A stretch of 64,000 bases of DNA from Thalia democratica. Its lineage: Eukaryota. A program made the position numbers and the translations under genes. Shown piece by piece: positions 1 through 64,000 of the stretch (its first letter is position 1; each line of letters begins with the position of its first letter). Location: assembly GCA_965202585.1 (NCBI GenBank), contig CBDBBG010000051.1, positions 1 to 64,000 of the forward strand, written 5' to 3'. The notes beneath the pieces were generated by a model that ran no database searches, was not told where the DNA came from, and saw only the letters and a list, made by a program, of their open reading frames with translations.

Positions 1-1580
1 AAACCCGGATCCGGCAGAATACTAATTTTATGGATTCAGTAGATAATTAACAAATAATTTTTGTAATCAAATAATTTATTCAAAACTACTGACTTTAGAA
101 CATTTTAGCAAAATAAATACTATTTAAATTAGCTTCAGAAAGTAAATAAAATATTTTGTTTAAATGATAAATTGTGTTTTAACAAACTCATAATAACACA
201 TTAGAATTTATTTATTGTTAAGTATGTTATCAAAAAACTATCCAAAATATTGCGAAGAAATTTATGATTAGTAATAAAAGTAACTGAAGCTTCTAAAGGT
301 AATACAAGTTTGGAATACTTTGCAAAAACTTATATTACAATAGCATTATAAAAACATCAGTTACTACACATAGTATGCTTAAAAACTTTTTTAATATTTA
401 ACACATTAGAAAACTTTGAAAAATTTGATTTGATTTGAAAAACTTAACTTCAATCCAAGAATTGAATATCTTTTAGAAAGAAACTTGAAAAATTTAAGTT
501 ATAAGTTTATTAATTGTATATTCCAAAAACACTTATTCTGGTATTTAGAAAACATTTAAATCGAAAAAAGGTTAAACTAAAAACTGTTGTTGTAGTGCAA
601 TTTTACAAAGTTTAAATATCTTAACTCAATAATGAAATAAAAAAGGTTACATCATATTAAAGTAGAAACATTGAAATACGAAAATTAAACAAAAGTTTTT
701 AAACTTAATTTAATAACAGTTTTCTAAATAAACTGCATGATAAATTATGAACTCTCTAACTATAAAACTTCAGAAAATTATCATACCTTGAAACAATAAG
801 TACCTAAACTCTCCAATAAAAGGTTGACACGACTTGAAGAAAAACAAGTTACCATTGTTTTAGAGAAGTTAGTAAAAATACTGCTAATTAACCTTGAGTA
901 CCTAAAAATATCATTAAGATAATAAAGCTACTTAATATTTGAAAGGCAAAGATGCTTATTAAGAAACAAAACATTTCTAAAACATAAAAACAAGACTTAT
1001 TTTAAAGGTCAAGAAACATTTTAAGCAAATTAAACTTAGTTTTTTTTTGTTAATTAAAACAAGCCTGAATTTTTTATTTACTCAGAAAAGTTATGTGTGG
1101 CAACCATGCTACGAGTTCTAAACGAATTTAAATAGATGATTAATTTTTATTTAATTGAAATTGAATAACTGTTGTGTCATAAATTTGGAACCAGTAGAAA
1201 ACTTATGTACTCAATAGAGCTTTGTATATCACTCAAAATTATAGAAAGACGGTGCAAAAAAAGTTCTCTTAGTTTTTAATATTAACTTAAGTTTAAAACT
1301 TGGAAAAATGTCATGATCAAAAAAATTATCACTTACTTCAACATGTATAAAAATATTTCTGTCAAGCTTGTTTTCAGATAAAATACTTACAAAATTTCTT
1401 CTATTAGCAAAAAAGCTTAAATTTTTTCTGAGAAATATACTATCATACTTGCAAAGCATTTTTTGTTTTAAACTTCTCAATCAATACGCAGGTAAAACAT
1501 TAATTAAAACATACTGAATAAAATAGTAATATGATCGTGCTAAAATGCTTGCGTTCAACATTACAACAAATCAAACATTT

Positions 1581-4500
1581 TCACGATTTAAACAAGCAGC
1601 TGAACAGTTTGGGCACCAGAACGGGCATCAACCCGGCAACCACAGCCACGATCATGTTCTTGTGCTCCCACAAAAACCCCCTGTTGCGAGAACGCCACTT
1701 TTCATGCACTTCCGCCATCCGCTCGCGACTCCTCCTGCTGATGTTCAGGCACGGCTCCACCTCCTCCAAACCGCACTCTCCGAGCAGGGAAATCCCCGAC
1801 AGCCCCATGTAGCTGTGGAGGGGGTCGGCGTGGACCTGCGGCCACTTGCCCATCCCCCCGGTCAGCGGGTCCTGGGTGGAGAGGACAAAGTGGACGGCTT
1901 CTTCCTTGGACACCGCGTCGAGGTGGCCGACAATCTTCAGGGTGGATCCGATCCAGAAGGTGTAGCAGGTGTCGTCGTCCTTGTGCGGTCGGCCGTGGAA
2001 CCCGCACCGCTGCCGCCACAGCAGCCAGTTGGTCAGCTTGTCCATCTTGCTTCCGCCCAGCACCTCGTCCAGCTTGCCCATCATCTTCAGCGAAGCCACC
2101 GCGCAGAACGTCGACCCGCCGTGGCTCTCGTTGCATCGTCCCTGGCCGAAACCTGTCGTTTGAAAGTTGATGGGTTTTTCACATCTCGCTTGGTTTTAAT
2201 ACTTTTTCAAAGGTTGTATAGTTAACATGGTATGAGAAAACGCTAGTGATTTTAAATAAAACAGCTGAAAGAATTTTTGAAGATTAAAATATATTTTCAA
2301 ATTTTTATTGTTACATTATTATACGTTTTACTTTGTTCATATGTTATTCTACAACACTAACCTCCGTCGTAGGAGAAACTGCTCGCGATGAACTCACACG
2401 CTTTTGTGACGTCGACGCACGAGAAGTCGTTGAGTATGGTGCACACGCACATGGCGCAGTACATGAACCTCATGTCCCTCTCGCCATTTTCCACGCACAT
2501 CTCCTTGAAACCACCGTCTTCCAGCTGGAGGGCTCTGATGCCTTCCAAGCAGCCTTTTCTGTTGATGAGTCAGTTGCTTGTTGCGTTAAGAAAAGAAATT
2601 GCTGTTTAGCACGTTTTGGTTTATTTTTTCTCAAAATAAGCGCTTGTGTTTATGTCAGTTTTGTTATACTTTCATTGCCTTGTATAAACACCACTATTGG
2701 TATCTTAAAAGTGCATACATCCATGTAGTTTATATTATTGAAGTTTGTGATTTAGTTAAAATTTAAGTGAAAATTAAAATGAGTCAATAGATAGAGATCT
2801 TTTTAAATATACACTTTATTGCCAATGATGTCATTAAAACAGAGAAATTCAAGTCTTGATGCTAACAAGTTTTACATCAGTGACTTTATACTTAAAGTAA
2901 AATACATTATTGACACTTAAAAAAAATACTGAGAAAGTCATGTAACTTGTTATAAATTATAAAAAGTTACTCAGTATAGTACACATTATTACACTCTTAG
3001 TTTTTTAATCAACACAACTTCTGAAGTAGTAAAACTTACTTAAGAAACTTTTTAACAGAAGTATCTAATACAGTTAAAACAAAACTTTTTATACTTAATA
3101 TACGTATAACTAATATATTAACATTGAATTACTAGTCTACATTAACGCTAACAAGTAATAGAAACAGAATCAAAACATGAAAACATTACTTTGCTGAAAA
3201 GAAAACTGCTGACTATCTTTGAATCAGTTTTGCTAAAAATAAAGAATGCTAGTATATGACAAAGGTAGCTAAAGGCTTTATGTTAAAGTTTATCTTAATA
3301 TAAATTAATATATAATGATATCAAAGATTAAATATACACCATAGCTTTACTGAGTGGAAACTTTATTTTTAATTTATTATATTTATTATAAACGAACATG
3401 TTCTATATCCTGTATATGATTATTGACTGTTAGAAAATAACACTGAAATAACTTTGAAAAATTAAAACAAATTAGTATGATTTAATTAATAGCTATAAAA
3501 GTTGACTTTTAGTACAGGCATCTTACATTTTTTTTAAACATGAATTTGCAATGTCTATAACTGAAAATCTGTTTATAAAGCTATAAAAATTCAATGTTAT
3601 ATAAAAATTATAATGTTATTGTAGTAGTTTAATTAAAATAAATTAAACAAATGTTTGATTGCTTATTATGTAACCTTTGAAAAAAAGTTTTAAATATATT
3701 TTCATAATCTTTTTTTGATTGAAAACTTTTGAAGTTTTATGTTTATTAAGCAAAATGTTATGAACACAAACAAATTTTAAATCTAATTTAAACCTACTTT
3801 ATAAATCACTGTAAAAATATTTTTAAATGCAGAAACTAGCGCATGTAGCAAAAAAAAAATAAATTGGTGATAATTTTAGTTCAAGAATTTTTCTTTTTAA
3901 CTTGAAGAATTTTTTGATCAACTCTGAGAGTGTTTGATAATTTAAATTTTAAATAACATTTAAAATGATAACAAACCTTTTTTTAAATCAAAGTCTATCG
4001 CTGTTAGACTAAAAGTTTTCTCAAAAATAGTTAATAAGCTAGTATAAAATTTAAAAAATTTTAAAGATGCAAAACTTTACTAAATTTGTCTCCATAATAT
4101 TTATCAAATTTATAAGAAAAGGTAATCAGACATTGTCAAACACAACTAATCAACTCTTATCAAATTATATAAAAAAAAAACAGTTCAATTAATCAACTAA
4201 ACAAATCTTATAGTACTTAAGATTTAGAAAGGACAAAAAAAAAGTACAAACCTGTCAACTCTTGACAAGTCATCCCCCAATATCAGCAATATCGACAGGG
4301 CGCAGTAAGTCATGGCAACGTGGGACGTGTTGTTTCCATTATCACACGCCCCATTAGAATCCCCTCCCATGAAACCGCACCTGTGCAAGTTGTCCCCGCT
4401 CTCATTGGATACTATCTGCAGCGAGTATATCCAATCGACAAGCTCTTCCTGATCTTTCAACACGTGGAGGGAATCCAACACGTCCAATGCCGACACGCAG

Positions 4501-4610
4501 AAGAAAATGATGGTGAGGCGTTGCGAGTCGAGCACACACATCTGGCTGGGCAGGGTGTTGAGGACCCGCGTGAAGTACTTGACGTGCTTCTCCTTGTAGA
4601 AATCACTCAT
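1581..4610 (-). CDS. PGGT1B: Geranylgeranyltransferase type I beta subunit, 3 exons: 4610-4252, 2558-2362, 2152-1581 (1128 nt, 375 aa + TGA)
   Basis: GT-AG introns (AG|GTTTGT...catcaacAG|A, phase 2; GAG|GTTAGT...aacgacAG|G, phase 1) join three track ORFs in frame: ...LSRVDRKGCLEGIRALQLEDGGF...SYDGGFGQGRCNESHGGSTFC... Family motifs present: RLTIIFF, HVAMTY, DMRFMYCA, ESHGGSTFC, GFHGRPHK, DTCYTFW (Zn ligands D, C), GKWP (the Lys that replaces Mg2+ in GGTase-I), DPLHSY (Zn ligand H). Confidence 0.96.
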
Positions 4611-5269
4611 GTGTTCGTTTTAATTTAAATTTTGCAATAATCTGTATGCAAAAGGTAGAAGTAGAATTTGATATAAGATTTTTTAAAGAGAATATTATAC
4701 TTAGTAAAAGTAGAAAAAAATCCCATGACCTCAAAATTTACTACTTAACCTATCAAACTAAAGAATACAATGCTTTATCATTTTTTGTTAACTTTTAACA
4801 TTTTCTTTTTAGTAAACTGATTAGTCTATATTTGCAACATGGATATTTTGTTTAGAAGATAAGACTTAACATAATTGTTCTCAGTAAAACCTGGGTAAAA
4901 ATAAAAAGCAGATGTATGTAAGTGAACTACTATATCTATTTCCAAGTATAAGTATATTTTTCATTTTTAGAAAAAAAAAACTATTTTGTTGAGATATGAA
5001 GTAAAATTATTTGAAATATCTTCATCAGTCAACTTACTAAGTGAAAATAACAATGGTATATGTTCAAGTACAAGTATATATAAATTGTGGAAAGCCTCAA
5101 GCTATCACTTGTATAACTTTATTATGTTGTTAACTATTTGACTTTTGAGGGTATCACTTTGCTAAAAATTAAATGTTGAGGAAAATGTGCAGGTTTAATA
5201 CTATAATGTAAAAGTCTTAAAAATGTTGTACACAAACTTTGAAACAAGAGTCTGGGTTAGTTTAGTTGA

Positions 5270-5370
5270 TTCACCTAGCCAAAAAAAAATTGTTATGATC
5301 AAAAGTGGTAACACTTTTTTAAGTAAACACTTTTCAAAAAAATAGAAATAACTGTATGATGTGTAATTGT
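5270..5370 (-). pseudogene. Possible decayed second exon of the cyclin K pseudogene (also 33112-33212, 60954-61054)
   Basis: A tttcAG acceptor at 5371-5373 is followed by frameshifted fragments (YFFEK...LPLL...FLA) at roughly the spacing of the cyclin box IYFHRF...FP...LFLAGK. Similarity is weak. Confidence 0.3.
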
Positions 5371-5547
5371 CTGAAACTGCTTGCAATATTTGCTTGTAAA
5401 AAGAGCTGTTAATTACAACTTCATAGTTGAAATATTTTTGGTTTTAATACAGATAAAGCATAAGTTAAAAACAAAAAATACATTGTGTAAGATGAATAGA
5501 ATTTACTAATTTATAATACAATAGATTAAGTTAAAAAAATTCAGGAC

Positions 5548-6021
5548 CAAGTAAAATAAATGACCCAAACTTTTGACAAGTTAAAAAATGACCTCGAAAG
5601 TGTCATTAAGTAAAAATAATGATCCCAGATATATTTTTACAACAAAAATTAACTATTTTCAATTAATTTTCACTTTGGTCACTTTTGCAACAATAAAAAT
5701 TTTGCAGGAATAAAAATAAAAACTTATCAAAAAATACCAACCAAGGATGAGGGTTAAGGGTAACAGTAATAATAAAAAAATATCGACCAAAAGTAAGGGG
5801 TAACAATGATAGTTAAAAAATAGTGATATTAAATATGTATACACTTATAATATAAATAATAATTTTTAATTACTGACCAAGTGTAAGGGTTATGGGTAAC
5901 AATGATAATTAAAGAATTAAGTAAAAATAATGAACCCAAAAATTGAACAAGTAAATAATATGTCCCTAGAAAAATTTGGATTGAGTAAAAATAATGACCC
6001 AAAAGTCATTTATTTTACTTG
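5548..6021. mobile_element. 474-bp MITE/foldback-like element in the putative cyclin K intron (also 33390-33863, 61232-61705)
   Basis: Perfect 17-bp inverted repeat CAAGTAAAATAAATGAC (5548-5564 / 6005-6021). About six direct internal variants of the motif, plus a thrice-repeated GGGTAACA(A)T. No clear target-site duplication. Confidence 0.6.
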
Positions 6022-6120
6022 ATTTCAAAAACAAAAACAATAGTAAAATCCAACAGACAGATATTTCAACTTGTTGTATGGACATGTGATAAAATAAAAT
6101 AAATTTAAAAGATCACTTAC

Positions 6121-6276
6121 AAACTTTCTTGTATGAACTTGAGTCCCTCACTCCTATACCTCAACTCAGTTTCAGAAGGAATTCCATCTTCAAAACTAGA
6201 TGTTTTCTTCAGACCAGCCTTCTCCTAATACCAAATAGGCTTGCTCAGTTTATAGAAGGTTTTTTGGTGATGACAT
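6121..6276 (-). pseudogene. CCNK: Cyclin K first coding exon, disabled by a +1 A in an A6 run (6260-6265) and a premature TAG (6225-6227)
   Basis: Translates MSSPK(fs)TFYKLSKPIWY*EKAGLKKTSSFEDGIPSETELRYRSEGLKFIQESL. This is 18/37 ungapped identities to the human cyclin K N-terminus as I recall it ([37 protein letters not shown]). An acceptor (ttctaacAG) lies upstream and a GTAAGT donor at 6120-6115. Confidence 0.82.
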
Positions 6277-7650
6277 TAAGTTGGTTTTAATATATTTTCT
6301 GTTAGAAGTTTAATAATTTGTAATACTAAGCTTTTACTTGTGTTGGGTATCTTGATAAAAATTTTCTTTTTATATAAATTAGTTTGTCTGTTTGTACTTA
6401 AAAGAATTTATAATTAGTTGTATGGTTTGAAAGTTTCAATGAGTTTAAAGATAAATTTAAGTTAATATAAATGAAACATTTTAGACCTCACAGCTCACAA
6501 GTAGTTAATGTTCATAACTTTTCAAAAACAGACTAAGTTCTAAGACATAATTAGTCTAGCAACATAAAAAGTTTTTACAGCAGTATTATATCAGCACTTA
6601 TTTAATTAAATAAACCAAATAAATGAGTTATGAAAAATTTAAACCGATAATATTTGTGGCTTAAAACTGAACTTGAACAATTTCAGAAATATCTTAATAT
6701 AATGATGGCACAATCATTCATGAATATTTTGATAATTGTGTCTTTATTTAGCATTCACTCACTATGAACAATGTGGCTTTTTATTTTCTACCTGCTTCAA
6801 AAAGTTGTTATATCAGTGACTACAAAAACTCAGTAGTTTTGGCAAATATGGCAAAACGATTGAAACTAAATTATAACTAAAATGAGTTTGCAAAAGTAAA
6901 GTGTAATGATATTACCTGATGAAAATAAAGGCTTTAAGCTAAATATAATTAATCTTATGCAAATTGTTAAGTAATAAACATGTTTAAAGAAAATAGAAAA
7001 AAAAAAATTGTAAAATTTAGAGTTGAGAACTTAGTTTATACTTTTTTATGAAGTTGTCAATGTAGTTTATATGAGCACAATGAATTACTGTAGCTTAAAT
7101 ATTAAACAATACGTTCAACCAATTATCTTTACTGCAGTAAAAAATGTAGAAATTAAGAAAAACTTCAAAAGAACAAACTGAAATGAAAATAAAATATAAA
7201 CAATTTATTTTTTACCAAAAAAAAAAGTATCTAAGGTTTAACATTATGTAAAATAAAAAGTATTTAGTGATCGAAAAAGCTAAAAACCACCCTGCTGTGC
7301 TAAGATAGTGTTTCAATTTGTAGTTTTTATGAATTTTGTAAAATCTTACATTTTAATGTGACATCACAACTAAATAGTGTTTTGCAAAATTATTTTTTTC
7401 AATGAATATTCATTTGAGAAAAGCACTTGTAGTAAAAACAGCTCTAGATGCTGTAAGTGTAAAGTAACTCTAAATCTTTTTTTTTCTTTTTTATACTGTC
7501 TATGTGAGCTACTTAAGCAAACTCTATTTGATTGTCAATATTCTTGAAGATAAAACTTGATAGTTGTGGCTCATTTTATCTTCTAAAAATCTTATGTTTG
7601 TACATTGTGTGAGTAAGTTTAAGAAAGCATTTGACCTAGTTTGGGAACCA

Positions 7651-8197
7651 ACAGTCTTGAAAGTTTATGTTGATAATCTATACTATTTCTCATGCAAATT
7701 CTTTAAAAAATGTTTTTAATTTATCTTCTAATTCATCATATAATGCATTCATTGTACTTACAGTCTTGAAAGTTTATGTTGATAAAATATACTATCTCTC
7801 ATGCAAATTCTTTGAAAAAAGTCTTTATTTTATCTTCTAATTCATCATATAATGCATTCATTGTACTTACAGTCTTGAAAGTTTATGTTGATAATCTATA
7901 CTATTTCTCATGCAAATTCATTGAAAAAGTCTTTATTTTATCTTCTTATTCATCATATAATGCATTCATTGTACTTACAGTCTTGAAAGTTTATGTTGAT
8001 AACATATACTATCTCTCATGCAAATTCTTTGAAAAAAGTCTTTATTTTATCTTTTAATTCATCATATAATGCATTCATTGTACTTACAGTCTTGAAAGTT
8101 TATGTTGATAATATATACTATTTCTCATGCAAATTCTTTGAAAAAATTCTTTATTTTATCTTTTAATTCATCATATAATGCACTCATTATACTTACA
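7651..8197. repeat. Tandem repeat, 5 units of 108-109 bp
   Basis: Unit starts (acagtcttgaaagtttatgttgata) at 7651, 7760, 7869, 7977, 8086. Confidence 0.95.
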
Positions 8198-10417
8198 TGA
8201 TGCTATAAAAAAATCATCAAGAGGCTTTAAAAACTTGCATCTCAGTCTTTGAAATCTTTAAAACATCATTGTAAAGTGAACTGAGTAGAAAAAATTTAAA
8301 AGAATTCTTTTGAAAATCTTTTGAACTTCTGTAAAATTTTAAAACTTCTAGGTTGTTTCAAATCCTTTGTCTTTATAAGTTGTAACTGTAGCTTTCTCCT
8401 CCATGTTGGGTTTAGGCAATGGATCACACTTTTTTGGATTCTGATTGAAGATTAGTACCTACTACAGCAGCTGTTGAGGTTAGTTTGTTTAATAGTTAAT
8501 CAGGTTGTTTTAATTTGTGCAAAACTTAGTATTTTTTGCTAGGGTTACCAGTCAGACTATTGAATATCAAAGTTAAGGATTTTTGGATATTATAATAAAA
8601 CTTGATATTTTGTCTCAACTTTTTACTTATTAATATTTGAGTCCTTTTGTTACTATTAAGTTTTTGGAGTGCTCATCCTTGAATAACATAAAGCTTTAGA
8701 TGTTAATTAAGTTTTGCACAAATTCAGACTAGCACTTTTATTAACAGAATGGTAATCTTGGTTTGTACCATTAACGTATATTTGTCTTGTTGGGCTTCAT
8801 TCTCCTAAGATTACTTGGCTACCTCAATAAAAAGCTTAAAGAAGACTCAAAAATAAATAAAATCATTAAAAAGTAGCAACATTTGTGTTAAAATTTATGA
8901 GCTTGTATAAAGAAGTGTTGTATTCATGAATGAAGCTCAAAGAGACAGTAAGCTAAATGTAGAAGTTTATTTACAACATAAAATTCAAGTTAATTAATTT
9001 TGATTGTATTAATGTAGTTTATATATTCATAGATTAATGATTTGTAAAAAGAAGTACTTCTTAAATTGTGCATAAAAGATAAGTAGCAAGAGTAATTATA
9101 AAACAAAGTGTTATTAGTTTCATAGATTGTTTTTTTTACAAAAGAAAACAGTTAAACCATATCAGGATTAGGTTTGCTAGTAAACAAAATGTTCCAAAAT
9201 TGTAAGTTTACATTCATATATTTACAAAGCAGTTCACAGCAAGCAAAATTTAAAAGTTGTTAGTGCATATGTGTATTGGGTTTATTCTTACCTTTGTTTA
9301 ATTTTTTTATTCTTCTATCACTAACTTCTTTCTCTTCTTTTATCTATCAATAATTTCTTTTGTTCATATGTTTGCACTAATAAGCTTTTGACAACAACTT
9401 GCTGTACTGTTTTTTATGTATATGACAAATTTAAAGACTAAATTTTGGGAATACTATAAATATTAGTTTAATAGAGCCATGAAGATTTTAAGTGATGTTA
9501 AATGCAGAGTATTTAAGATGCAAGTATTTGACAAAATTTAAAATGAACTACATGCTACCAAACATATGTTATTGACACAAAGTAGTATGGTTTAACTGTT
9601 TTAGTTTGTGACAATGTATAAAAAAGATAAATTGAAATCAGAAAATGTCTTTATTTTATATGCACAATTTAAGAAACAGACAATAAGTTGTTTTAATTCA
9701 ATTGTTAGTACACTAAGCATTCAAAGTTTAAGTCTATTATTAAATATATGAAGTAAATTAAAGACTACCAGTTAGTAAATAGTAATGGTAGTAAAAGTGC
9801 ATGAGAAACCTTTGTAGTTAATAGATTGGTAGATAGTTACTTAACAATTAGCCCAACGTAACTGTCATGGAAAACTTTAGCTTATGTAAGTTACATGTAA
9901 AATGATATCCTGTAGTAGGAACAGTACAAAACTGAAGTTAAACAAAAAAAACAAACAATTTTTTACATTATGTTCTTTGACAAAAACATATTTGTTACTG
10001 AAATCTAAATAAATTCAACCTGTTTAGTTGAATCTTAAGTGTTTATTTATTTTTGAATAACTAAAGTTTTATACTGTTTTGAATAGATTATAAAAGTAAA
10101 TCAATTTACGTAAGCAAGTTAACTGACTATTGTTTGAATATAAATAGAGTACAGTTCAATCATATAAATAGATTTGTGTATGTACACATTTAAAAAATCT
10201 GTAGTTTCATATTAATCTTTCTTTTTTTATTTGCTTTATTTTCTGTCATTGAAAAGCACACCTATCTATGAGATTGATGAACTGTTTTCTATGTACATGT
10301 AAAACATTAGGTAATTAACTAGGATAATGTAATATCTTAAACTATATTCATTTAATTTAGGCTGTACTAAACCATAACTAAAGAATGCAATTATAACTAA
10401 GTCAATACATCTATAAG

Positions 10418-10725: not shown

Positions 10726-10943
10726 TTTCTGTCAAATGGACCGTGAGTAGCGTAACTGTCAAACAAATATGTGTTGTATTTGTACGGTCTTTATCTGTTA
10801 TCTTTTACTAACCTTGAGCTTATATGATCTAATTTATCAATGTATAACCATTAAAGGCCTGACGGTAATATCGGTTGATAGTTTATTAATTATTGACTGA
10901 GTGGTTTTGTATTGGTGAGTTTGAAAAGTAAGTTTTAGGTAGC

Positions 10944-11048: not shown

Positions 11049-11082
11049 TTTAGGCCCGGTTACTCTGCTGGTCGGCACCCCT

Positions 11083-23969: not shown

Positions 23970-23971
23970 CA

Positions 23972-51811: not shown

Positions 51812-51818
51812 CATTTTT

Positions 51819-52145: not shown

Positions 52146-55100
52146 TACTTTTATTTGTTAGATATTGAAAAATGTGCAAAATTTTTACACCGAGCGTGTT
52201 TTCTCGCTTTCACACTTTTACAATAGCTTTAAGTTATTTTAAACGTCCGATTCTTTACATTGAGATTCTGTCTTTTTATTTATACATAAGTATTTATTAT
52301 CTTTTTTGTTTTTCAAAAAGTTCGTTTTAAGTTACTAGTTAACCTTCAATACAAACTCATTAATAAGTAACTAACATCAAAGCGGATATACAAAAATAGT
52401 AGAGTGGCAAAAAATCCTGGAATTTTGTAGAAAAATTGCAAAAATCCTTAAATTTTTTTAATTATAGTTTTTTAACAACTTTGATAAAATAAAAAATTAA
52501 AATTGTATCTTTCTTAGACTTAAAAAAAAGTACAGAAGTTATAATTAGTAATCGATATATTATTAGTTAAAATATCATTTTAGTTAAAGAAACTACTTAA
52601 CTACTTGCATTTTCATTGCTCTGAATGTCAAGTCAGTCAATAAGAGCCTATTTCTGACTGGTCTAACTGAATACAATTTAGATTAAGAGAAAATTAAGAG
52701 CAAGAGCAAAATAAGAGCAGAGCCAAATAAAAATGTCTGATGTAATGTTTTATGCCCAATGTTACTTATATTAAATGTTGCAAATTTTGACATACAAGTT
52801 TGCCACGGATCGAGCTGAAAAATCTTTTTTTGACTTTTCTAAATCAAACTCTTAATAAAAACCTATTAAAAAATACGTAACTAAAGACTTGAAAGTTTAG
52901 CTTGTTTCAAAAACTCAATTAGACCCTAAAAAATGATAAATTGCAAAAGCAAATTATTTTAGAAAATAATATTATCAAAATGCAGTTTTAAGTATCGATA
53001 AACTTTTTTTTTAAGAGCATGTTGACATAAATTTCCTAAAATTTTTCAAAAATCCCTATATTTTTCTGACTTTTGTAATTTTTACTTGTTTTTCCTGGCT
53101 TTGTGGCAACCCTGAACATATTATTTAATTAAAAAGGTTGATACAAAAAATTAAACAGTAATAAATTTAAAATAAAAACAAATAAAATCTAGATTGTATG
53201 GCTATTTATGATATATATCAACATAAAGGCTTTTGAACAATCACATGAGAAGAACTTTGAAAAAGTTGATTAAAATTACTACAGGGCTCGTGCGCGAAAT
53301 TTTTTTCATTTAGCCTGACTGAGACCAATTTAGCCTGACATTTTCTCAAAGTAAGGAAAATTCCCTTTAGATGTTATTTTAGGTATTAGGGGGTCTTGAT
53401 TAGTAATATTGTAGTCTCTGATTTCAACCAGCTTTATCTCAAAAATATTTAGAGCTTTAAAAATATGCAAAAAACAACACATAGCTTAGTTACAACTCAA
53501 TAAAATAAGGCTAAATTGTGAAAAAGGTGATTGATCCCCCCTATGCCCAAAACGTAACAAACTCAGTGATAAGTTTTAAAATAAGTGTTATTACAAACTA
53601 TTACTAGTGTAACAATTTAATATATATTACTTAACACAGTTGTTCAATTTAATTAAGCACTAAGTAAAAATATTATAACCAGCAGATTTATAATAAACGA
53701 CGTGCATTGTGGTGTTTTATTAAAATTTAAAATGAAACGCTTACAAGAGTATTAAAAATCAAACAAAAAGCTAAGTTGTTGAACTAAACTGTAATGTTTA
53801 AACTGTATTTTTTTATGAGTTTTCACAGTTATGACGTATATAATCTACTCAAAAAAAATAATGAAGATTCTTAAAAACTATTTAGAGATTCAAAAACAAG
53901 TTTTAAGCATTTATTTTTACAGATACTGACTGATTTTGATTTTAATAGCTAAACCATTTTTTAGAAATAAGTTAACTTCTCAATTCGATCTTAAAAAGAT
54001 TTCTCAACTTTTTTTAATCAAAAATTTTCAAGCATTTGAATTGAAAAAAAATAAAAATTCTCAAATCTTTAAATAAAAAAACTGATTTAGCCTGACGTTT
54101 TTCAAAAAAACTGATTTAGCCTGACTTAGCCTGACGCGCACGAACCCTGTTTTTGGTTAAACTTTAGAATCCGAATCTAGTCCCAGTTATCTACAAAACT
54201 AACAGAAAAGATCATAATTTTTTTAGTAGACAAAAGTCTTTACTTTGAAACTATAAATTAAACAAAAAAAAACAGCCTATAAAAAAACCAATTATCATTA
54301 ATAAATGTATAGCATGATATACTTTTTTGAATAGAAATAAATTTTAAATGACAGAAAAACATTTACAAGTATAGTTACAAATAAGATAAAATTAACAATA
54401 AGTTCACATTGTTGTAAAAGTTACAAAAACAGCTAGTCAGAAAAAATTTAATGACAAATCCAAACATTATTTTTCAATTTGCTTTTATTAAATGATTATT
54501 CTCTGACGGAATTAATAAAAACATGTTGAATGATTAATTCATTTTAATTTTTAATTGTTCTTTTTATGACATAACGATATTTTCTTTTGCTTTATCTGCA
54601 CTTTTTTCAATTTTTACCAATCAGTTTTGTTCTTACTGTTTTAATTTTTGTATATTATCTTTAACGTTGAATAATAAGGTTAGGTTTCTAGTCAGCGGGC
54701 AGCCTATTGTGTAACTTTTAACATAATGGTTATATTGGACATAAAATTTTGCAAGCCGCTTTATTTATGTTATTGTATGCTAACATGTAGTTTTTTGTTT
54801 AGCACTAAATCACAAAAATTTAACCATGGAATTATTACTACAGTTTGTTAGCAATTTCATTTTTACCAGCTTGTAGAAACTTATTTAATACTTTATCGAC
54901 TTATTTTCTTAGTAAAAACTTTAATAATCAAAAATAGTGGCCGACCGGATCTCACTCTAAGGCTGTATGTTATCCACTTCTACTCTATGAAAAATGATTG
55001 AACTAAAAATCAGAAGTTGTCGGTCTAATTACCTTTAATCGTTAACTGTAACGTAACTAAACGTAAGAAACACTGAAATTAAATCTAAAAGGTAAGCTCT

Positions 55101-57264
55101 GAATCAAAATAATCTTTACAAAACATTAAAACTAATTTTGTTAAAATACACGTAATAGGTAAAATTTTTGATATAAACATATTGAATATTTATATGCATC
55201 TTGCTTCTGATATTTTTAAAAAAAAGTATTCTATATTTTCATGATAACTATAACATAGTTTAATTTAATAATTTTATGATAACTAAGATTTAGTTAATTC
55301 GAATTGTTTTTCTAAACCAGATTTTTCCAAACTTTATTTTTCAAAACGACTTCTTTAAATAAATTCACTAAGCTATGGTCCCCTCTACTAAGATTTCTCA
55401 AAAAACTACCATTAAAAAACGGCTAAGACCTTTTTTTTTGCTCTTTATCATCAAATCCGGGATACCTAGTGTAATTAAAAACAACGTGCTTGAAAAAAAA
55501 GTCTTACCTAAGGTAGTTTTGAAACTTTCAGTATACATTCTGGAATTAATGACAAAGAGCAAAATAAGAAAAAATAAAAATATTTTAAAAGTATTTTAGA
55601 CTTACACTATATATATCAAAAAAAAATTTTGAAAATTAAACTAGGCATAAAATAAAAAAAAAATCACAAATTTCATTATATCTGAAAATCTTAATTTCAA
55701 ATAAAACCCGGATCCGGCAGAATACTAATTTTATGGATTCAGTAGATAATTTACAAACAATTTTTGTAATCAAATAATTTATTCAAAACTACTGACTTTA
55801 GAATATATTATCAAAATAAAAACTATTTAAATTAGCTTAAAAAAGTAAATAAATATTTTGTTTAAATGATAAATTTTATTTAAACAAACTCATAATAACA
55901 CATTAGCATTTATTTATCGTTAAGTATGTTATCAAAAAACTATCCAAAATATTGCGAATAAATTTATGATTAGTAATAAAAGTAACTGAAGCTTCTAATA
56001 CAAGCATGAAATACTTTGCAAAAACTTATATTACAATAGCAGAACTTTATAAAAACATCAGTTACTACACATAGTATGCTATAAAACTTTTTTAATATTT
56101 AACACATTAGAAATTTGATTTGAAAAACTTAAATTCAATCCAAGAATTGAATATCTTTTAGAAGATACTTGAAAAATTTAAGTTATAAGTTTATTCATTG
56201 TATATTCCAAAAACACTTATTCTGGTATTTAGAAAACATTTAAATCGAAAAAAGGTTAAACTAAAAGCTGTTGTTGTAGTGCAATTTTACAAAGTTTAAA
56301 TATTTTAACTCAATAATGAAATAAAAAAGGTTACATCATATTAAAGTAGAAACATTGAAATACGAAAATTAAACAAAAGTTTTTAAACTTAATTTAATAA
56401 CAGTTTTCTAAATAAACTGCATGATAAATTATGAACTCTCTAACTATAAAACTTCAGAAAATTATCATACCTTGAAACAATAAGTACCTAAACTCTCCAA
56501 TAAAAGGTTGACACGACTTGAAGAAAAACAAGTTACCATTGTTTTAGAGAAGTTAGTAAAAATACTGCTAATTAACCTTGAGTACCTAAAAATATCATTA
56601 AGATAATAAAGCTACTTAATATTTGAAAGGCAAAGATGCTTATTAAGAAACAAAACATTTCTAAAACATAAAAACAAGACTTATTTTAAAGGTCAAGAAA
56701 CATTTTAAGCAAATTAAACTTAGTTTTTTTTTGTTAATTAAAACAAGCCTGAATTTTTTATTTACTCAGAAAAGTTATGTGTGGCAACCATGCTACGAGT
56801 TCTAAACGAATTTAAATAGATGATTAATTTTTATTTAATTGAAATTGAATAACTGTTGTGTCATAAATTTGGAACCAGTAGAAAACTTATGTACTCAATA
56901 GAGCTTTGTATATCACTCAAAATTATAGAAAGACGGTGCAAAAAAAGTTCTCTTAGTTTTTAATATTAACTTAAGTTTAAAACTTGGAAAAATGTCATGA
57001 TCAAAAAAATTATCACTTACTTCAACATGTATAAAAATATTTCTGTCAAGCTTGTTTTCAGATAAAATACTTACAAAATTTCTTCTATTAGCAAAAAAGC
57101 TTAAATTTTTTCTGAGAAATATACTATCATACTTGCAAAGCATTTTTTGTTTTAAACTTCTCAATCAATACGCAGGTAAAACATTAATTAAAACATACTG
57201 AATAAAATAGTAATATGATCGTGCTAAAATGCTTGCGTTCAACATTACAACAAATCAAACATTT

Positions 57265-60200
57265 TCACGATTTAAACAAGCAGCTGAACAGTTTGGGCAC
57301 CAGAACGGGCATCAACCCGGCAACCACAGCCACGATCATGTTCTTGTGCTCCCACAAAAACCCCCTGTTGCGAGAACGCCACTTTTCATGCACTTCCGCC
57401 ATCCGCTCGCGACTCCTCCTGCTGATGTTCAGGCACGGCTCCACCTCCTCCAAACCGCACTCTCCGAGCAGGGAAATCCCCGACAGCCCCATGTAGCTGT
57501 GGAGGGGGTCGGCGTGGACCTGCGGCCACTTGCCCATCCCCCCGGTCAGCGGGTCCTGGGTGGAGAGGACAAAGTGGACGGCTTCTTCCTTGGACACCGC
57601 GTCGAGGTGGCCGACAATCTTCAGGGTGGATCCGATCCAGAAGGTGTAGCAGGTGTCGTCGTCCTTGTGCGGTCGGCCGTGGAACCCGCACCGCTGCCGC
57701 CACAGCAGCCAGTTGGTCAGCTTGTCCATCTTGCTTCCGCCCAGCACCTCGTCCAGCTTGCCCATCATCTTCAGCGAAGCCACCGCGCAGAACGTCGACC
57801 CGCCGTGGCTCTCGTTGCATCGTCCCTGGCCGAAACCTGTCGTTTGAAAGTTGATGGGTTTTTCACATCTCGCTTGGTTTTAATACTTTTTCAAAGGTTG
57901 TATAGTTAACATGGTATGAGAAAACGCTAGTGATTTTAAATAAAACAGCTGAAAGAATTTTTGAAGATTAAAATATATTTTCAAATTTTTATTGTTACAT
58001 TATTATACGTTTTACTTTGTTCATATGTTATTCTACAACACTAACCTCCGTCGTAGGAGAAACTGCTCGCGATGAACTCACACGCTTTTGTGACGTCGAC
58101 GCACGAGAAGTCGTTGAGTATGGTGCACACGCACATGGCGCAGTACATGAACCTCATGTCCCTCTCGCCATTTTCCACGCACATCTCCTTGAAACCACCG
58201 TCTTCCAGCTGGAGGGCTCTGATGCCTTCCAAGCAGCCTTTTCTGTTGATGAGTCAGTTGCTTGTTGCGTTAAGAAAAGAAATTGCTGTTTAGCACGTTT
58301 TGGTTTATTTTTTCTCAAAATAAGCGCTTGTGTTTATGTCAGTTTTGTTATACTTTCATTGCCTTGTATAAACACCACTATTGGTATCTTAAAAGTGCAT
58401 ACATCCATGTAGTTTATATTATTGAAGTTTGTGATTTAGTTAAAATTTAAGTGAAAATTAAAATGAGTCAATAGATAGAGATCTTTTTAAATATACACTT
58501 TATTGCCAATGATGTCATTAAAACAGAGAAATTCAAGTCTTGATGCTAACAAGTTTTACATCAGTGACTTTATACTTAAAGTAAAATACATTATTGACAC
58601 TTAAAAAAAATACTGAGAAAGTCATGTAACTTGTTATAAATTATAAAAAGTTACTCAGTATAGTACACATTATTACACTCTTAGTTTTTTAATCAACACA
58701 ACTTCTGAAGTAGTAAAACTTACTTAAGAAACTTTTTAACAGAAGTATCTAATACAGTTAAAACAAAACTTTTTATACTTAATATACGTATAACTAATAT
58801 ATTAACATTGAATTACTAGTCTACATTAACGCTAACAAGTAATAGAAACAGAATCAAAACATGAAAACATTACTTTGCTGAAAAGAAAACTGCTGACTAT
58901 CTTTGAATCAGTTTTGCTAAAAATAAAGAATGCTAGTATATGACAAAGGTAGCTAAAGGCTTTATGTTAAAGTTTATCTTAATATAAATTAATATATAAT
59001 GATATCAAAGATTAAATATACACCATAGCTTTACTGAGTGGAAACTTTATTTTTAATTTATTATATTTATTATAAACGAACATGTTCTATATCCTGTATA
59101 TGATTATTGACTGTTAGAAAATAACACTGAAATAACTTTGAAAAATTAAAACAAATTAGTATGATTTAATTAATAGCTATAAAAGTTGACTTTTAGTACA
59201 GGCATCTTACATTTTTTTTAAACATGAATTTGCAATGTCTATAACTGAAAATCTGTTTATAAAGCTATAAAAATTCAATGTTATATAAAAATTATAATGT
59301 TATTGTAGTAGTTTAATTAAAATAAATTAAACAAATGTTTGATTGCTTATTATGTAACCTTTGAAAAAAAGTTTTAAATATATTTTCATAATCTTTTTTT
59401 GATTGAAAACTTTTGAAGTTTTATGTTTATTAAGCAAAATGTTATGAACACAAACAAATTTTAAATCTAATTTAAACCTACTTTATAAATCACTGTAAAA
59501 ATATTTTTAAATGCAGAAACTAGCGCATGTAGCAAAAAAAAAATAAATTGGTGATAATTTTAGTTCAAGAATTTTTCTTTTTAACTTGAAGAATTTTTTG
59601 ATCAACTCTGAGAGTGTTTGATAATTTAAATTTTAAATAACATTTAAAATGATAACAAACCTTTTTTTAAATCAAAGTCTATCGCTGTTAGACTAAAAGT
59701 TTTCTCAAAAATAGTTAATAAGCTAGTATAAAATTTAAAAAATTTTAAAGATGCAAAACTTTACTAAATTTGTCTCCATAATATTTATCAAATTTATAAG
59801 AAAAGGTAATCAGACATTGTCAAACACAACTAATCAACTCTTATCAAATTATATAAAAAAAAAACAGTTCAATTAATCAACTAAACAAATCTTATAGTAC
59901 TTAAGATTTAGAAAGGACAAAAAAAAAGTACAAACCTGTCAACTCTTGACAAGTCATCCCCCAATATCAGCAATATCGACAGGGCGCAGTAAGTCATGGC
60001 AACGTGGGACGTGTTGTTTCCATTATCACACGCCCCATTAGAATCCCCTCCCATGAAACCGCACCTGTGCAAGTTGTCCCCGCTCTCATTGGATACTATC
60101 TGCAGCGAGTATATCCAATCGACAAGCTCTTCCTGATCTTTCAACACGTGGAGGGAATCCAACACGTCCAATGCCGACACGCAGAAGAAAATGATGGTGA

Positions 60201-60294
60201 GGCGTTGCGAGTCGAGCACACACATCTGGCTGGGCAGGGTGTTGAGGACCCGCGTGAAGTACTTGACGTGCTTCTCCTTGTAGAAATCACTCAT
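57265..60294 (-). CDS. PGGT1B: PGGT1B copy C, exons 60294-59936, 58242-58046, 57836-57265
   Basis: Same translations as copy A at +55,684. Confidence 0.96.
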
Positions 60295-61804
60295 GTGTTC
60301 GTTTTAATTTAAATTTTGCAATAATCTGTATGCAAAAGGTAGAAGTAGAATTTGATATAAGATTTTTTAAAGAGAATATTATACTTAGTAAAAGTAGAAA
60401 AAAATCCCATGACCTCAAAATTTACTACTTAACCTATCAAACTAAAGAATACAATGCTTTATCATTTTTTGTTAACTTTTAACATTTTCTTTTTAGTAAA
60501 CTGATTAGTCTATATTTGCAACATGGATATTTTGTTTAGAAGATAAGACTTAACATAATTGTTCTCAGTAAAACCTGGGTAAAAATAAAAAGCAGATGTA
60601 TGTAAGTGAACTACTATATCTATTTCCAAGTATAAGTATATTTTTCATTTTTAGAAAAAAAAAACTATTTTGTTGAGATATGAAGTAAAATTATTTGAAA
60701 TATCTTCATCAGTCAACTTACTAAGTGAAAATAACAATGGTATATGTTCAAGTACAAGTATATATAAATTGTGGAAAGCCTCAAGCTATCACTTGTATAA
60801 CTTTATTATGTTGTTAACTATTTGACTTTTGAGGGTATCACTTTGCTAAAAATTAAATGTTGAGGAAAATGTGCAGGTTTAATACTATAATGTAAAAGTC
60901 TTAAAAATGTTGTACACAAACTTTGAAACAAGAGTCTGGGTTAGTTTAGTTGATTCACCTAGCCAAAAAAAAATTGTTATGATCAAAAGTGGTAACACTT
61001 TTTTAAGTAAACACTTTTCAAAAAAATAGAAATAACTGTATGATGTGTAATTGTCTGAAACTGCTTGCAATATTTGCTTGTAAAAAGAGCTGTTAATTAC
61101 AACTTCATAGTTGAAATATTTTTGGTTTTAATACAGATAAAGCATAAGTTAAAAACAAAAAATACATTGTGTAAGATGAATAGAATTTACTAATTTATAA
61201 TACAATAGATTAAGTTAAAAAAATTCAGGACCAAGTAAAATAAATGACCCAAACTTTTGACAAGTTAAAAAATGACCTCGAAAGTGTCATTAAGTAAAAA
61301 TAATGATCCCAGATATATTTTTACAACAAAAATTAACTATTTTCAATTAATTTTCACTTTGGTCACTTTTGCAACAATAAAAATTTTGCAGGAATAAAAA
61401 TAAAAACTTATCAAAAAATACCAACCAAGGATGAGGGTTAAGGGTAACAGTAATAATAAAAAAATATCGACCAAAAGTAAGGGGTAACAATGATAGTTAA
61501 AAAATAGTGATATTAAATATGTATACACTTATAATATAAATAATAATTTTTAATTACTGACCAAGTGTAAGGGTTATGGGTAACAATGATAATTAAAGAA
61601 TTAAGTAAAAATAATGAACCCAAAAATTGAACAAGTAAATAATATGTCCCTAGAAAAATTTGGATTGAGTAAAAATAATGACCCAAAAGTCATTTATTTT
61701 ACTTGATTTCAAAAACAAAAACAATAGTAAAATCCAACAGACAGATATTTCAACTTGTTGTATGGACATGTGATAAAATAAAATAAATTTAAAAGATCAC
61801 TTAC

Positions 61805-61960
61805 AAACTTTCTTGTATGAACTTGAGTCCCTCACTCCTATACCTCAACTCAGTTTCAGAAGGAATTCCATCTTCAAAACTAGATGTTTTCTTCAGACCA
61901 GCCTTCTCCTAATACCAAATAGGCTTGCTCAGTTTATAGAAGGTTTTTTGGTGATGACAT
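61805..61960 (-). pseudogene. CCNK: Cyclin K pseudo-exon, copy C
   Basis: Same sequence as 6121-6276. Confidence 0.82.
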
Positions 61961-63334
61961 TAAGTTGGTTTTAATATATTTTCTGTTAGAAGTTTAATAA
62001 TTTGTAATACTAAGCTTTTACTTGTGTTGGGTATCTTGATAAAAATTTTCTTTTTATATAAATTAGTTTGTCTGTTTGTACTTAAAAGAATTTATAATTA
62101 GTTGTATGGTTTGAAAGTTTCAATGAGTTTAAAGATAAATTTAAGTTAATATAAATGAAACATTTTAGACCTCACAGCTCACAAGTAGTTAATGTTCATA
62201 ACTTTTCAAAAACAGACTAAGTTCTAAGACATAATTAGTCTAGCAACATAAAAAGTTTTTACAGCAGTATTATATCAGCACTTATTTAATTAAATAAACC
62301 AAATAAATGAGTTATGAAAAATTTAAACCGATAATATTTGTGGCTTAAAACTGAACTTGAACAATTTCAGAAATATCTTAATATAATGATGGCACAATCA
62401 TTCATGAATATTTTGATAATTGTGTCTTTATTTAGCATTCACTCACTATGAACAATGTGGCTTTTTATTTTCTACCTGCTTCAAAAAGTTGTTATATCAG
62501 TGACTACAAAAACTCAGTAGTTTTGGCAAATATGGCAAAACGATTGAAACTAAATTATAACTAAAATGAGTTTGCAAAAGTAAAGTGTAATGATATTACC
62601 TGATGAAAATAAAGGCTTTAAGCTAAATATAATTAATCTTATGCAAATTGTTAAGTAATAAACATGTTTAAAGAAAATAGAAAAAAAAAAATTGTAAAAT
62701 TTAGAGTTGAGAACTTAGTTTATACTTTTTTATGAAGTTGTCAATGTAGTTTATATGAGCACAATGAATTACTGTAGCTTAAATATTAAACAATACGTTC
62801 AACCAATTATCTTTACTGCAGTAAAAAATGTAGAAATTAAGAAAAACTTCAAAAGAACAAACTGAAATGAAAATAAAATATAAACAATTTATTTTTTACC
62901 AAAAAAAAAAGTATCTAAGGTTTAACATTATGTAAAATAAAAAGTATTTAGTGATCGAAAAAGCTAAAAACCACCCTGCTGTGCTAAGATAGTGTTTCAA
63001 TTTGTAGTTTTTATGAATTTTGTAAAATCTTACATTTTAATGTGACATCACAACTAAATAGTGTTTTGCAAAATTATTTTTTTCAATGAATATTCATTTG
63101 AGAAAAGCACTTGTAGTAAAAACAGCTCTAGATGCTGTAAGTGTAAAGTAACTCTAAATCTTTTTTTTTCTTTTTTATACTGTCTATGTGAGCTACTTAA
63201 GCAAACTCTATTTGATTGTCAATATTCTTGAAGATAAAACTTGATAGTTGTGGCTCATTTTATCTTCTAAAAATCTTATGTTTGTACATTGTGTGAGTAA
63301 GTTTAAGAAAGCATTTGACCTAGTTTGGGAACCA

Positions 63335-63881
63335 ACAGTCTTGAAAGTTTATGTTGATAATCTATACTATTTCTCATGCAAATTCTTTAAAAAATGTTTT
63401 TAATTTATCTTCTAATTCATCATATAATGCATTCATTGTACTTACAGTCTTGAAAGTTTATGTTGATAAAATATACTATCTCTCATGCAAATTCTTTGAA
63501 AAAAGTCTTTATTTTATCTTCTAATTCATCATATAATGCATTCATTGTACTTACAGTCTTGAAAGTTTATGTTGATAATCTATACTATTTCTCATGCAAA
63601 TTCATTGAAAAAGTCTTTATTTTATCTTCTTATTCATCATATAATGCATTCATTGTACTTACAGTCTTGAAAGTTTATGTTGATAACATATACTATCTCT
63701 CATGCAAATTCTTTGAAAAAAGTCTTTATTTTATCTTTTAATTCATCATATAATGCATTCATTGTACTTACAGTCTTGAAAGTTTATGTTGATAATATAT
63801 ACTATTTCTCATGCAAATTCTTTGAAAAAATTCTTTATTTTATCTTTTAATTCATCATATAATGCACTCATTATACTTACA
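63335..63881. repeat. 109-bp tandem repeat, copy C
   Basis: Same as 7651-8197. Confidence 0.95.
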
Positions 63882-64000
63882 TGATGCTATAAAAAAATCA
63901 TCAAGAGGCTTTAAAAACTTGCATCTCAGTCTTTGAAATCTTTAAAACATCATTGTAAAGTGAACTGAGTAGAAAAAATTTAAAAGAATTCTTTTGAAAA

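What the first reader, a model, noticed from the sequence alone, without database searches (positions are those of the whole stretch)
1..64000. Near-perfect 27,842-bp tandem amplicon whose only intact genes are PGGT1B and three tRNAs
Seen: at least 2.3 head-to-tail copies with no net indel over ~27 kb, even across many long A/T homopolymers, so the array is very young or actively homogenised. Established: GGTase-I and FTase share one alpha subunit (FNTA). Inference: if real, amplifying only the GGTase-I beta subunit could titrate the shared alpha and shift prenylation balance, while also raising Ile/Asp/Asn tRNA dosage. An over-expanded assembly, an unrolled circle or eccDNA concatemer are the main alternatives.
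Basis: partly seen in the sequence, partly recalled or inferred. Interest (0 to 1): 0.72.

Follow-up and report, generated by a model that had tools for sequence, protein, structure and literature searches.

The report
Young 28-kb tandem array carrying PGGT1B
A 27.8-kb stretch carrying one housekeeping enzyme gene (PGGT1B) and three tRNA genes really is repeated head to tail about four to five times in this marine animal's chromosome, but it is one of many such large repeat arrays in this genome and nothing yet shows that the extra gene copies change the cell's chemistry.

Summary
The window is the start of an unplaced 125,204-bp contig (C60) made only of 4.5 copies of a 27,842-bp unit. The period is exact, with no indel and 24 differences in 96,742 adjacent-copy comparisons.

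Each unit holds an intact three-exon PGGT1B (375 aa) and an Ile/Asp/Asn tRNA trio. An RNA contig from another individual splices exactly at my exon borders.

The array is probably chromosomal, not a circle:
- The first base of C60 continues, to the base, the contig right of a 100-N gap at C6:70,299,406-505.
- Window 1-620 is a diverged edge copy.

An internal word-depth calibration gives about 3.9 array units per diverged flanking copy, so the assembly's 4.5-5 copies is roughly right.

About 17 kb of the unit belongs to a family of large-unit arrays that is widespread in this genome, so PGGT1B and the tRNAs look like passengers.

The flanking PGGT1B copy on C6 carries a 1-bp frameshift. The two copies differ mostly synonymously (dN/dS 0.07).

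The dosage/titration idea is untested. The tRNA-dosage idea is weak, because at least 36 other trios exist.

This is a new member of a known kind. Earlier notes of this scan report other tandem arrays elsewhere in this genome.

The parts
1..620 (+). Diverged edge copy of the unit end (equivalent to 27862-28462). It differs from the array type by 24 substitutions and 5 indels of 1-16 bp.
   Evidence: 47 alignment columns agree with the C6-left type against the array type; base 1 continues the contig right of the C6 gap.
621..28462 (+). Unit 1 of the homogenised array (type A at the variable patch)
28463..56304 (+). Unit 2 (type B)
56305..64000 (+). Start of unit 3. The contig continues to 125,204 bp, 4.5 units in all.
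1581..4610 (-). PGGT1B (GGTase-I beta), copy 1: exons 4610-4252, 2558-2362, 2152-1581; 375 aa; GT-AG introns
   Evidence: The splice borders match RNA contig record 19 of run X4.
29423..32452 (-). PGGT1B copy 2, identical to copy 1
57265..60294 (-). PGGT1B copy 3, identical to copy 1
23896..24303 (+). tRNA trio: Ile-AAT 23896-23970, Asp-GTC 23976-24049, Asn-GTT 24230-24303
51738..52145 (+). tRNA trio, second unit
24724..24897 (.). 174-bp variable patch with 11 sites. Type A is in units 1 and 4, type B in units 2 and 3 (equivalent place in unit 2: 52566-52739).
6022..22939 (.). 17-kb 'family core'. It is collinear, at 77-93% identity, with the 32,212-bp unit of another array at C6:66.23 Mb, and shares modules with many other large-unit arrays.
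25440..26307 (.). Copy of a dispersed repeat of about 870 bp (dozens of genomic copies at 84-92% identity)
22447..22939 (.). Internal 152-bp satellite (3.2 copies). Other internal tandem repeats lie at 7651-8197 (109 bp) and 19312-20114 (171 bp).

Best explanation
This is a genuine chromosomal large-unit tandem array (macrosatellite type) in the repeat-rich distal part of scaffold C6, at about 70.30 Mb. Its unit joins a 17-kb core, belonging to a family of large tandem repeats common in this genome, to an 11-kb segment that holds PGGT1B, a dispersed repeat and a common tRNA trio. Older diverged copies flank it: C6-left with a frameshifted PGGT1B, and an edge copy made of C6-right plus window 1-620. 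One unit variant was then multiplied very recently, or is kept uniform, most likely by unequal crossing-over or gene conversion between sister chromatids or homologues. This gave about four to five near-identical units per haplotype. PGGT1B and the tRNAs are passengers. The gene copies are intact and have been under purifying selection, so they may well be the working PGGT1B of this individual, but any dosage effect is only inferred. Shown: the periodicity, the gene integrity, the edge copy, the abutment and the relative depth. Inferred: the mechanism of amplification, the chromosomal placement and the function.
For: Exact 27,842-bp period over 125 kb, with 24 differences and no indel in 96,742 comparisons. 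C60 is all array. The reverse complement of the bases right of the C6 gap ends at unit position 27861 and window base 1 is 27862, and the two are contiguous inside the array. Window 1-620 is a diverged copy that shares 47 columns with the C6-left type, then switches sharply to 100% identity. The word depth of run X1 contigs is 401.6 + 102.6 x (share of 31-mers also present in the C6-left copy), r = 0.98 over 8 contigs, which gives about 3.9 array units per flanking copy. Three distinguishable unit types occur in the order A-B-B'-A. Another array inside the C6 scaffold has a 32,212-bp unit at 99.987% identity and is collinear with window 6022-22939. Further arrays with units of 5.5 to 38 kb share modules with this unit. 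For PGGT1B: Pfam PF00432; best solved match GGTase-I beta (1N4P_B, E 8e-51) against RabGGT beta at 2e-29; Zn-ligand Asp, Cys and His aligned. Between the array and C6-left copies there are 18 synonymous and 5 non-synonymous differences, dN/dS 0.07.
Against: All runs were available only as Logan contigs, so no read was seen spanning two units and no true per-base depth was obtained; the tool itself warns that contig depth is not a copy number. The calibration rests on 8 contigs and assumes that the C6-left type is single-copy. It gives 3.9 against the 5 assembled copies of that stretch, so one unit may be surplus or the haplotypes may differ. The abutment shows that the two pieces were once one assembled sequence; it does not show that the join was right, and a scaffolder or curator did cut it. 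Assembly consensus can make copies look more alike than they are. The array-type exon 1 was not seen in the three other samples laid (X3, X4, X5), so the array may be private to one individual.
Confidence: 0.72

Rival explanations
1. Adaptive or otherwise functional dosage amplification: the extra PGGT1B copies are expressed, raise GGTase-I beta, compete with FTase beta for the single shared alpha subunit and shift prenylation. The array would then be kept by selection rather than being a passenger event. This can be true together with the structural explanation above.
For: All five assembled array copies are intact, with Zn ligands and canonical splice sites. There is purifying selection between copies, dN/dS 0.07. 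The only other PGGT1B in the assembly is frameshifted. The three alpha-subunit-repeat loci are not in arrays. That the alpha subunit is shared is established knowledge of CaaX prenyltransferases.
Against: No RNA from the array-bearing individual was available. The one transcript seen is of the non-array type in exon 1. This genome multiplies many large segments without obvious function (and earlier notes s1-271238 and s1-291871). 60% of the unit is non-coding repeat core. The literature search found no germline PGGT1B amplification.
Confidence: 0.15
2. Assembly over-expansion: only one or two copies exist and the assembler walked round a loop in its graph several times.
For: The contig is unplaced and was cut from its neighbour. 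The copies are almost identical, so reads shorter than 27.8 kb cannot order them. The calibration gives 3.9, below the 5 assembled copies of that stretch.
Against: The X1 word depth of about 400 is flat over the unit. It rises by about 100 x the shared fraction exactly where 31-mers are shared with the C6-left copy (r = 0.98), so the array type is about fourfold the flanking copy. Three distinguishable unit types are present. Other arrays of the same kind are assembled inside chromosome scaffolds with the same regularity.
Confidence: 0.08
3. Extrachromosomal circle or unrolled circular molecule of 27.8 kb, assembled as a concatemer.
For: There is an exact period, no unique flank inside the contig, and both contig ends lie within the repeat.
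Against: Window 1-620 is not the array type but a diverged copy that continues to the base into chromosomal sequence right of the C6 gap. Units A, B and B' are interleaved in one contig. The depth is only about fourfold the flanking copy.
Confidence: 0.04
4. C60 and the C6-left locus are the two haplotypes of one locus: one with a single, frameshifted gene and one with the array. C60 would then be a retained haplotig.
For: Divergence between C60 and C6-left (1-5% in exons, 4-16% outside) is within the range seen between individuals here: the X4 transcript differs from C60 at 14 of 1027 bases.
Against: C60 abuts C6-right in the opposite orientation to C6-left, so the two sit side by side as inverted neighbours in the assembled sequence. 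The slope of 103 for the C6-left type is about twice the 36-66 depth of other minor X1 contigs, as expected if that copy is on both haplotypes.
Confidence: 0.1

Closest known systems
Mouse R2d2 (a copy-number gain of a 127-kb unit containing the single gene Cwc22; PMC4334553)
   Same: A large-unit copy-number gain that carries one intact housekeeping gene plus pseudogene debris. An older duplicate lies nearby, and copy number appears to vary between individuals.
   Different: R2d2 reaches 24 or more copies and causes female meiotic drive. Here there are only about 4-5 units of 27.8 kb, no transmission data, and the unit is mostly a pre-existing repeat family.
Gene-bearing macrosatellites of mammals (for example D4Z4/DUX4, CT47, GAGE, USP17/RS447); from my own knowledge, not tested here
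   Same: Head-to-tail arrays of kilobase-scale units, each with a gene copy, homogenised within an array and diverged between arrays.
   Different: Those units are 3-10 kb and mostly carry germline or lineage-specific genes. This unit is 27.8 kb and carries a universal single-copy enzyme subunit and tRNA genes.
Tandem amplicons of insecticide-resistance esterases (Myzus E4/FE4, Culex) and herbicide-resistance EPSPS; from my own knowledge, not tested here
   Same: Very young, near-identical amplicons of about 20-60 kb that raise the dosage of one enzyme gene and are polymorphic in populations.
   Different: In those cases a selective agent and over-expression are documented. Here neither is known.
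Other large-unit arrays of this same genome (C6:66.23 Mb with a 32,212-bp unit; C6:67.5 Mb 33,579 bp; C6:77.1 Mb 22,248 bp; C4:84.44 Mb 5,522 bp; C1:26.45 Mb 38,014 bp; unplaced C227, C307 and C922)
   Same: They share modules at 75-94% identity, show the same exact periodicity and are near-identical within an array.
   Different: Only the C60 array holds PGGT1B and the tRNA trio. The C6:66.23 Mb unit has about 15.8 kb of other sequence in their place, with GC-rich candidate exons that match no Pfam family.

Membership tests
GGTase-I beta subunit (PGGT1B) | Prenyltransferase alpha-alpha toroid domain over the full length | tested here: met
   PF00432: exon 1 piece E 1.4e-26 (profile positions 1-101), exon 3 piece E 1.9e-34 (185-304). 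Exon 2 covers 79-174.
GGTase-I beta subunit (PGGT1B) | Closer to GGTase-I beta than to RabGGTase beta or FTase beta | tested here: met
   1N4P_B E 8.3e-51 against RabGGT beta 2.4e-29 and FTase beta about 1e-6 for exon 3. For exon 1, only GGTase-I beta chains match.
GGTase-I beta subunit (PGGT1B) | Zinc ligands Asp, Cys and His of the active site | tested here: met
   In the alignment to 1N4P_B, the query stretch D-T-C-Y lines up with the chain's D-T-C-Y, and the query's L-H-S-Y with its L-H-A-Y. That these are the ligand positions is from my own knowledge of the rat enzyme.
GGTase-I beta subunit (PGGT1B) | Uninterrupted spliced reading frame that is actually spliced that way | tested here: met
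   375 codons plus stop from three exons with GT-AG introns. A 1027-nt RNA contig of run X4 joins 29420-29991, 30201-30400 and 32094-32348.
GGTase-I beta subunit (PGGT1B) | Forms an active heterodimer with the shared alpha subunit | not tested
   Three alpha-repeat loci exist. No complex prediction or assay was done.
Large-unit tandem array (macrosatellite) | Three or more head-to-tail copies of a unit of 1 kb or more | tested here: met
   4.5 units of 27,842 bp.
Large-unit tandem array (macrosatellite) | Multi-copy in the DNA of the individual, not only in the assembly | tested here: inconclusive
   Contig word depth gives about 3.9 array units per flanking copy. Raw reads were not available.
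Large-unit tandem array (macrosatellite) | Chromosomal location with flanks | tested here: inconclusive
   Base-exact abutment with the contig right of the gap at C6:70,299,506, and a diverged edge copy. The join itself was cut by the assemblers.
Large-unit tandem array (macrosatellite) | Copy number varies between individuals | tested here: inconclusive
   At the sites shown, X3 and X4 carry only the non-array letters in exon 1, X5 has only a short contig over the end of exon 1, and X3 contig depths are uneven (41-178). There is no calibrated copy number for these runs.
eccDNA or unrolled circle | Pure unit sequence without a transition to other sequence | tested here: not met
   Window 1-620 is a diverged copy continuous with C6-right.
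Meiotic-drive responder of the R2d2 type | Transmission ratio distortion linked to high copy number | not testable with these tools
   This needs crosses or pedigree data.

The most novel reading that the evidence does not exclude
A housekeeping prenyltransferase gene has been captured by a self-multiplying macrosatellite. In this individual the array copies have taken over its function, while the neighbouring older copy is freshly frameshifted. The array would be a private, centuries-old copy-number variant that either is under selection for higher GGTase-I beta or spreads selfishly, as R2d2 does.
Probability: 0.12. Interest if true: 0.6.

Novelty: new member of a known kind. Interest (0 to 1): 0.38.

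Why it matters
If the array copies are expressed, this would be a natural fourfold-or-greater germline dosage change of one subunit of an enzyme pair that competes for a shared partner. That is a rare natural experiment in prenylation balance. More securely, it shows that this genome makes and homogenises tandem arrays with units of 5-38 kb at a high rate, and that these arrays can carry off essential genes. For the assembly, it gives a concrete fix: C60 belongs, reversed, in the gap at C6:70,299,406-505.

Tried and rejected
- Raw-read depth and reads spanning two units: not obtainable, because all 11 runs offered were Logan contigs. I replaced this with an internal word-depth calibration.
- RNA evidence for the array copies: the only RNA-like run (X4) is from another individual and is of the non-array type in exon 1.
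- Other genes or RNAs in the unit: ORFs of 70 aa or more outside PGGT1B are low-complexity. Two ORFs that overlap the PGGT1B exons on the opposite strand match no Pfam family. Rfam found only the three tRNAs at gathering scores. At E of 0.1 or less it found nothing in 10400-13600 and only the same three tRNAs in 23300-25500.
- Cyclin-K relic noted by another reader at 6121-6276: a 35-aa frame looks cyclin-like by eye, but Pfam gives nothing. Left unconfirmed.
- Candidate exons in the C6:66.23 Mb array: six frames tested, no Pfam family.
- Origin of the A/B patch by conversion from a sampled paralogue: rejected, because neither type matches C6-right, C5 or the eight distant paralogues.
- Literature: no germline PGGT1B tandem amplification and no tunicate macrosatellite paper found.
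- Baseline depth from earlier notes of the scan: none recorded.
- Organism name: not determined. 'Marine, probably tunicate' comes from earlier notes only.
- One Pfam call and one paper search failed on input limits.
Full report
**1. The observation**

An offset of 27,842 bases gives 99.1% identity across the window. The other offsets tested give about 31-35%. All 320 mismatches fall in window 1-620 or in one 174-bp patch at 24724-24897.

The window is G000:C60:1-64000. C60 is an unplaced contig of 125,204 bp in an 802-Mb assembly of 1,833 contigs. I fetched the rest of C60 and found that it is nothing but this repeat, 4.5 units in all. From base 621 on there is no indel and there are 24 differences in 96,742 adjacent-copy comparisons. 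Each unit has 41 A/T runs of 8-11 bases.

The differences define three unit types in the order A, B, B', A. B' is type B plus one extra change at contig position 76091.

**2. Gene content**

PGGT1B lies on the minus strand in three exons: 4610-4252, 2558-2362 and 2152-1581. The introns are GT-AG and the product is 375 aa.

- Pfam PF00432 covers the protein.
- The best solved relatives are GGTase-I beta chains (1N4P_B, E 8e-51 for exon 3). RabGGTase beta (2e-29) and FTase beta (about 1e-6) score well below.
- The Asp, Cys and His zinc-ligand positions align.
- A 1027-nt contig of run X4 joins the three exons exactly at my borders, so the gene model is a real transcript structure.
- ARAGORN and Rfam agree on tRNA-Ile(AAT), Asp(GTC) and Asn(GTT) once per unit.
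- I found no other gene.

**3. Where the array sits**

Only one other PGGT1B exists in the assembly, at C6:70.294-70.299 Mb. The locus has three parts.

- *Left of the gap.* C6 is collinear with the unit from position 26308, through the unit end and start, to 4997. Identity is 84-96%.
- *The gap.* 100 N at C6:70,299,406-505.
- *Right of the gap.* An inverted copy of unit positions 27861 down to 23586, including the tRNA trio.

The first base right of the gap corresponds to unit position 27861, and window base 1 corresponds to 27862. The reverse complement of C6-right ends in ...TTTCAAATA and the window starts AAACCCGG.... Inside the array these two strings are adjacent. C60 is therefore the cut-off continuation, in reverse orientation, of the contig right of the gap.

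Window 1-620 is not sequencing noise. It differs from the array type by 24 substitutions and by indels of 1, 1, 5, 6 and 16 bp. At 47 alignment columns it agrees with the C6-left type against the array type. After base 620 identity to the array switches sharply to 100%.

This is what the edge of a homogenised array looks like. It argues against a free circle.

**4. Is it multi-copy in the DNA?**

Only Logan contigs were available, with no raw reads.

In run X1 (98% of sampled words, no differences, probably the assembled sample) eight contigs tile 28500-33737. Their word depths are 398-465. The depth is higher exactly where 31-mers are shared with the C6-left copy:

depth = 401.6 + 102.6 x shared fraction, r = 0.98.

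GC content does not explain this. The contig holding GC-rich exon 1 shares 8% of its words with C6-left and has depth 408. On this internal scale the array type is about 3.9 times the flanking copy. Other minor X1 contigs touching the stretch have depths of 36-66, about half of 103, as heterozygous sequence would.

The assembled 4.5-5 copies are therefore about right, perhaps one too many, or the two haplotypes differ. This is indirect. The tool warns that contig depth is not a copy number, and the fit rests on eight contigs.

**5. What the unit is made of**

Window 6022-22939 (17 kb) is collinear at 77-93% identity with the 32,212-bp unit of an array at C6:66.23 Mb. The copies of that array are 99.987% identical to each other.

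Modules of this core recur in many other arrays with exact periods:

| Place | Period (bp) |
|---|---|
| C6:67.5 Mb | 33,579 |
| C6:77.1 Mb | 22,248 |
| C4:84.44 Mb | 5,522 |
| C1:26.45 Mb | 38,014 |
| Several unplaced contigs | various |

The remaining 11 kb holds PGGT1B, an 870-bp dispersed repeat and the tRNA trio. The array is thus one subfamily of a genome-wide class of large-unit repeats that has picked up a gene-bearing segment. The trio itself occurs at least 36 more times on C5, C7, C8, C9 and C61, so the array adds little tRNA dosage.

**6. History of the gene copies**

The array and C6-left coding sequences differ at 18 synonymous and 5 non-synonymous sites, dN/dS 0.07. dS is 0.21 in exon 1 but 0.024 in exons 2-3, which matches the flanks (84% against 95-96% identity). 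The copies are therefore old, both were kept by selection, and their 3' halves have exchanged sequence or have a different history.

C6-left has one extra base in a short C run (CCC becomes CCCC at C6:70,294,752-763), which shifts the frame of exon 3. The contigs shown from X3, X4 and X5 carry no gap over that site, so the shift is either private to this haplotype or a consensus error.

At five of the exon sites shown, X3 and X4 carry the C6-left letter, and X5 does so at the one of them its contigs cover. None carries the array letter there. The array-type exon 1 was not seen in X3 or X4. This hints that the young array type is private to the sequenced individual's lineage.

Outside the variable patch, only one single-base change separates the units, and it shows up in two of the 96,742 adjacent-copy comparisons. 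Taken at face value, this means either that the last multiplication is only hundreds of generations old or that the units are continually homogenised. That is my inference, and assembly consensus may exaggerate the identity.

**7. Mechanism and rivals**

The best-supported reading is unequal exchange or conversion within an older, diverged set of duplicates. This recently multiplied one variant, with PGGT1B and the tRNAs as passengers (confidence about 0.7).

The assembly has five intact beta copies plus one broken one, against alpha-subunit-repeat loci on C6, C7 and C4 that are not in arrays. It lacks any expression evidence.

Gross over-expansion, a circle, and a pure haplotig reading are each disfavoured but not excluded. 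Their evidence is set out under the rival explanations.

**8. Comparison and novelty**

The closest described system is mouse R2d2, a 127-kb unit with the single gene Cwc22 that is copy-number polymorphic (PMC4334553). Also close are gene-bearing macrosatellites and resistance-gene amplicons (from my own knowledge).

I found no report of germline PGGT1B amplification. I class this as a new member of a known kind. Earlier notes of this scan describe other tandem arrays elsewhere in this genome (s1-271238, s1-291871). They agree with the picture of an array-prone genome but were not re-tested here.

**9. Unexplained**

The 174-bp patch differs at 11 sites between otherwise identical units. I polarised these sites against ten paralogues. 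Type A has five private changes, mostly transversions. Type B has four to six, mostly transitions. Neither type copies a sampled paralogue.

Noticed in passing
window 24724-24897 (and 52566-52739): A 174-bp patch inside a dispersed repeat carries all 11 differences between unit types A and B. Each type has about five private derived changes relative to ten paralogues, so this is a mutation cluster or a conversion from an unsampled donor.
   Followed up: partly
L009 (C6:70,294,752-763; whole gene C6:70,294,283-70,299,004): The PGGT1B copy beside the array has a 1-bp insertion in exon 3 (a run of three C becomes four) that shifts the frame. Otherwise it is 97-99% identical in protein. The contigs of three other samples show no such gap.
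   Followed up: partly
window 1 / L009 (C6:70,299,406-505): C60 fits, reversed, into the 100-N gap of scaffold C6. Its first base continues the contig right of the gap to the base, so the contig was cut at the border of the multi-mapping zone.
   Followed up: yes
L012-L015 (C6:66,226,001-66,266,000): Another array has a 32,212-bp unit at 99.987% identity. It shares the 17-kb core with this unit, but in place of the PGGT1B segment it has about 15.8 kb with GC-rich candidate exons (for example L015:2064-2447 minus, L012:941-1402 minus) that match no Pfam family.
   Followed up: partly
C6 66-77 Mb, C4 84.0-85.1 Mb, C1 26.45 Mb, unplaced C227, C239, C307, C536, C559, C922: Many large-unit arrays (periods from 5,522 to 38,014 bp) with exact spacing share modules with this unit at 75-94% identity. 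The distal fifth of C6 is rich in them.
   Followed up: partly
window 23890-24310: The Ile-Asp-Asn tRNA trio is a repeated module. At least 36 other full copies, often in inverted pairs, lie on C5, C7 (5.9-6.4 Mb), C8, C9 (25.6-26.0 Mb) and C61.
   Followed up: partly
window 1584-1700 (minus strand): The GGTase-I beta ends in a hydrophobic stretch of about 20 residues that is not aligned to the rat enzyme. Another reader of this scan noted it as a possible membrane anchor.
   Followed up: no
window 6120-6224 (minus strand): A 35-aa frame looks like the N-terminal part of cyclin K by eye, as another reader noted, but Pfam gives no match. It lies at the start of the 17-kb family core.
   Followed up: partly
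window 4252-4610 versus 1581-2558: Synonymous divergence from the C6-left copy is ninefold higher in exon 1 (0.21) than in exons 2-3 (0.024). This points to a recombination or conversion boundary within intron 1, where homology also breaks (window 2650-4060).
   Followed up: partly
window 28300-34299 in runs X5 and others: Marine and seawater metagenomes hold contigs of this gene region at low depth, so the animal's DNA is present in plankton samples.
   Followed up: no
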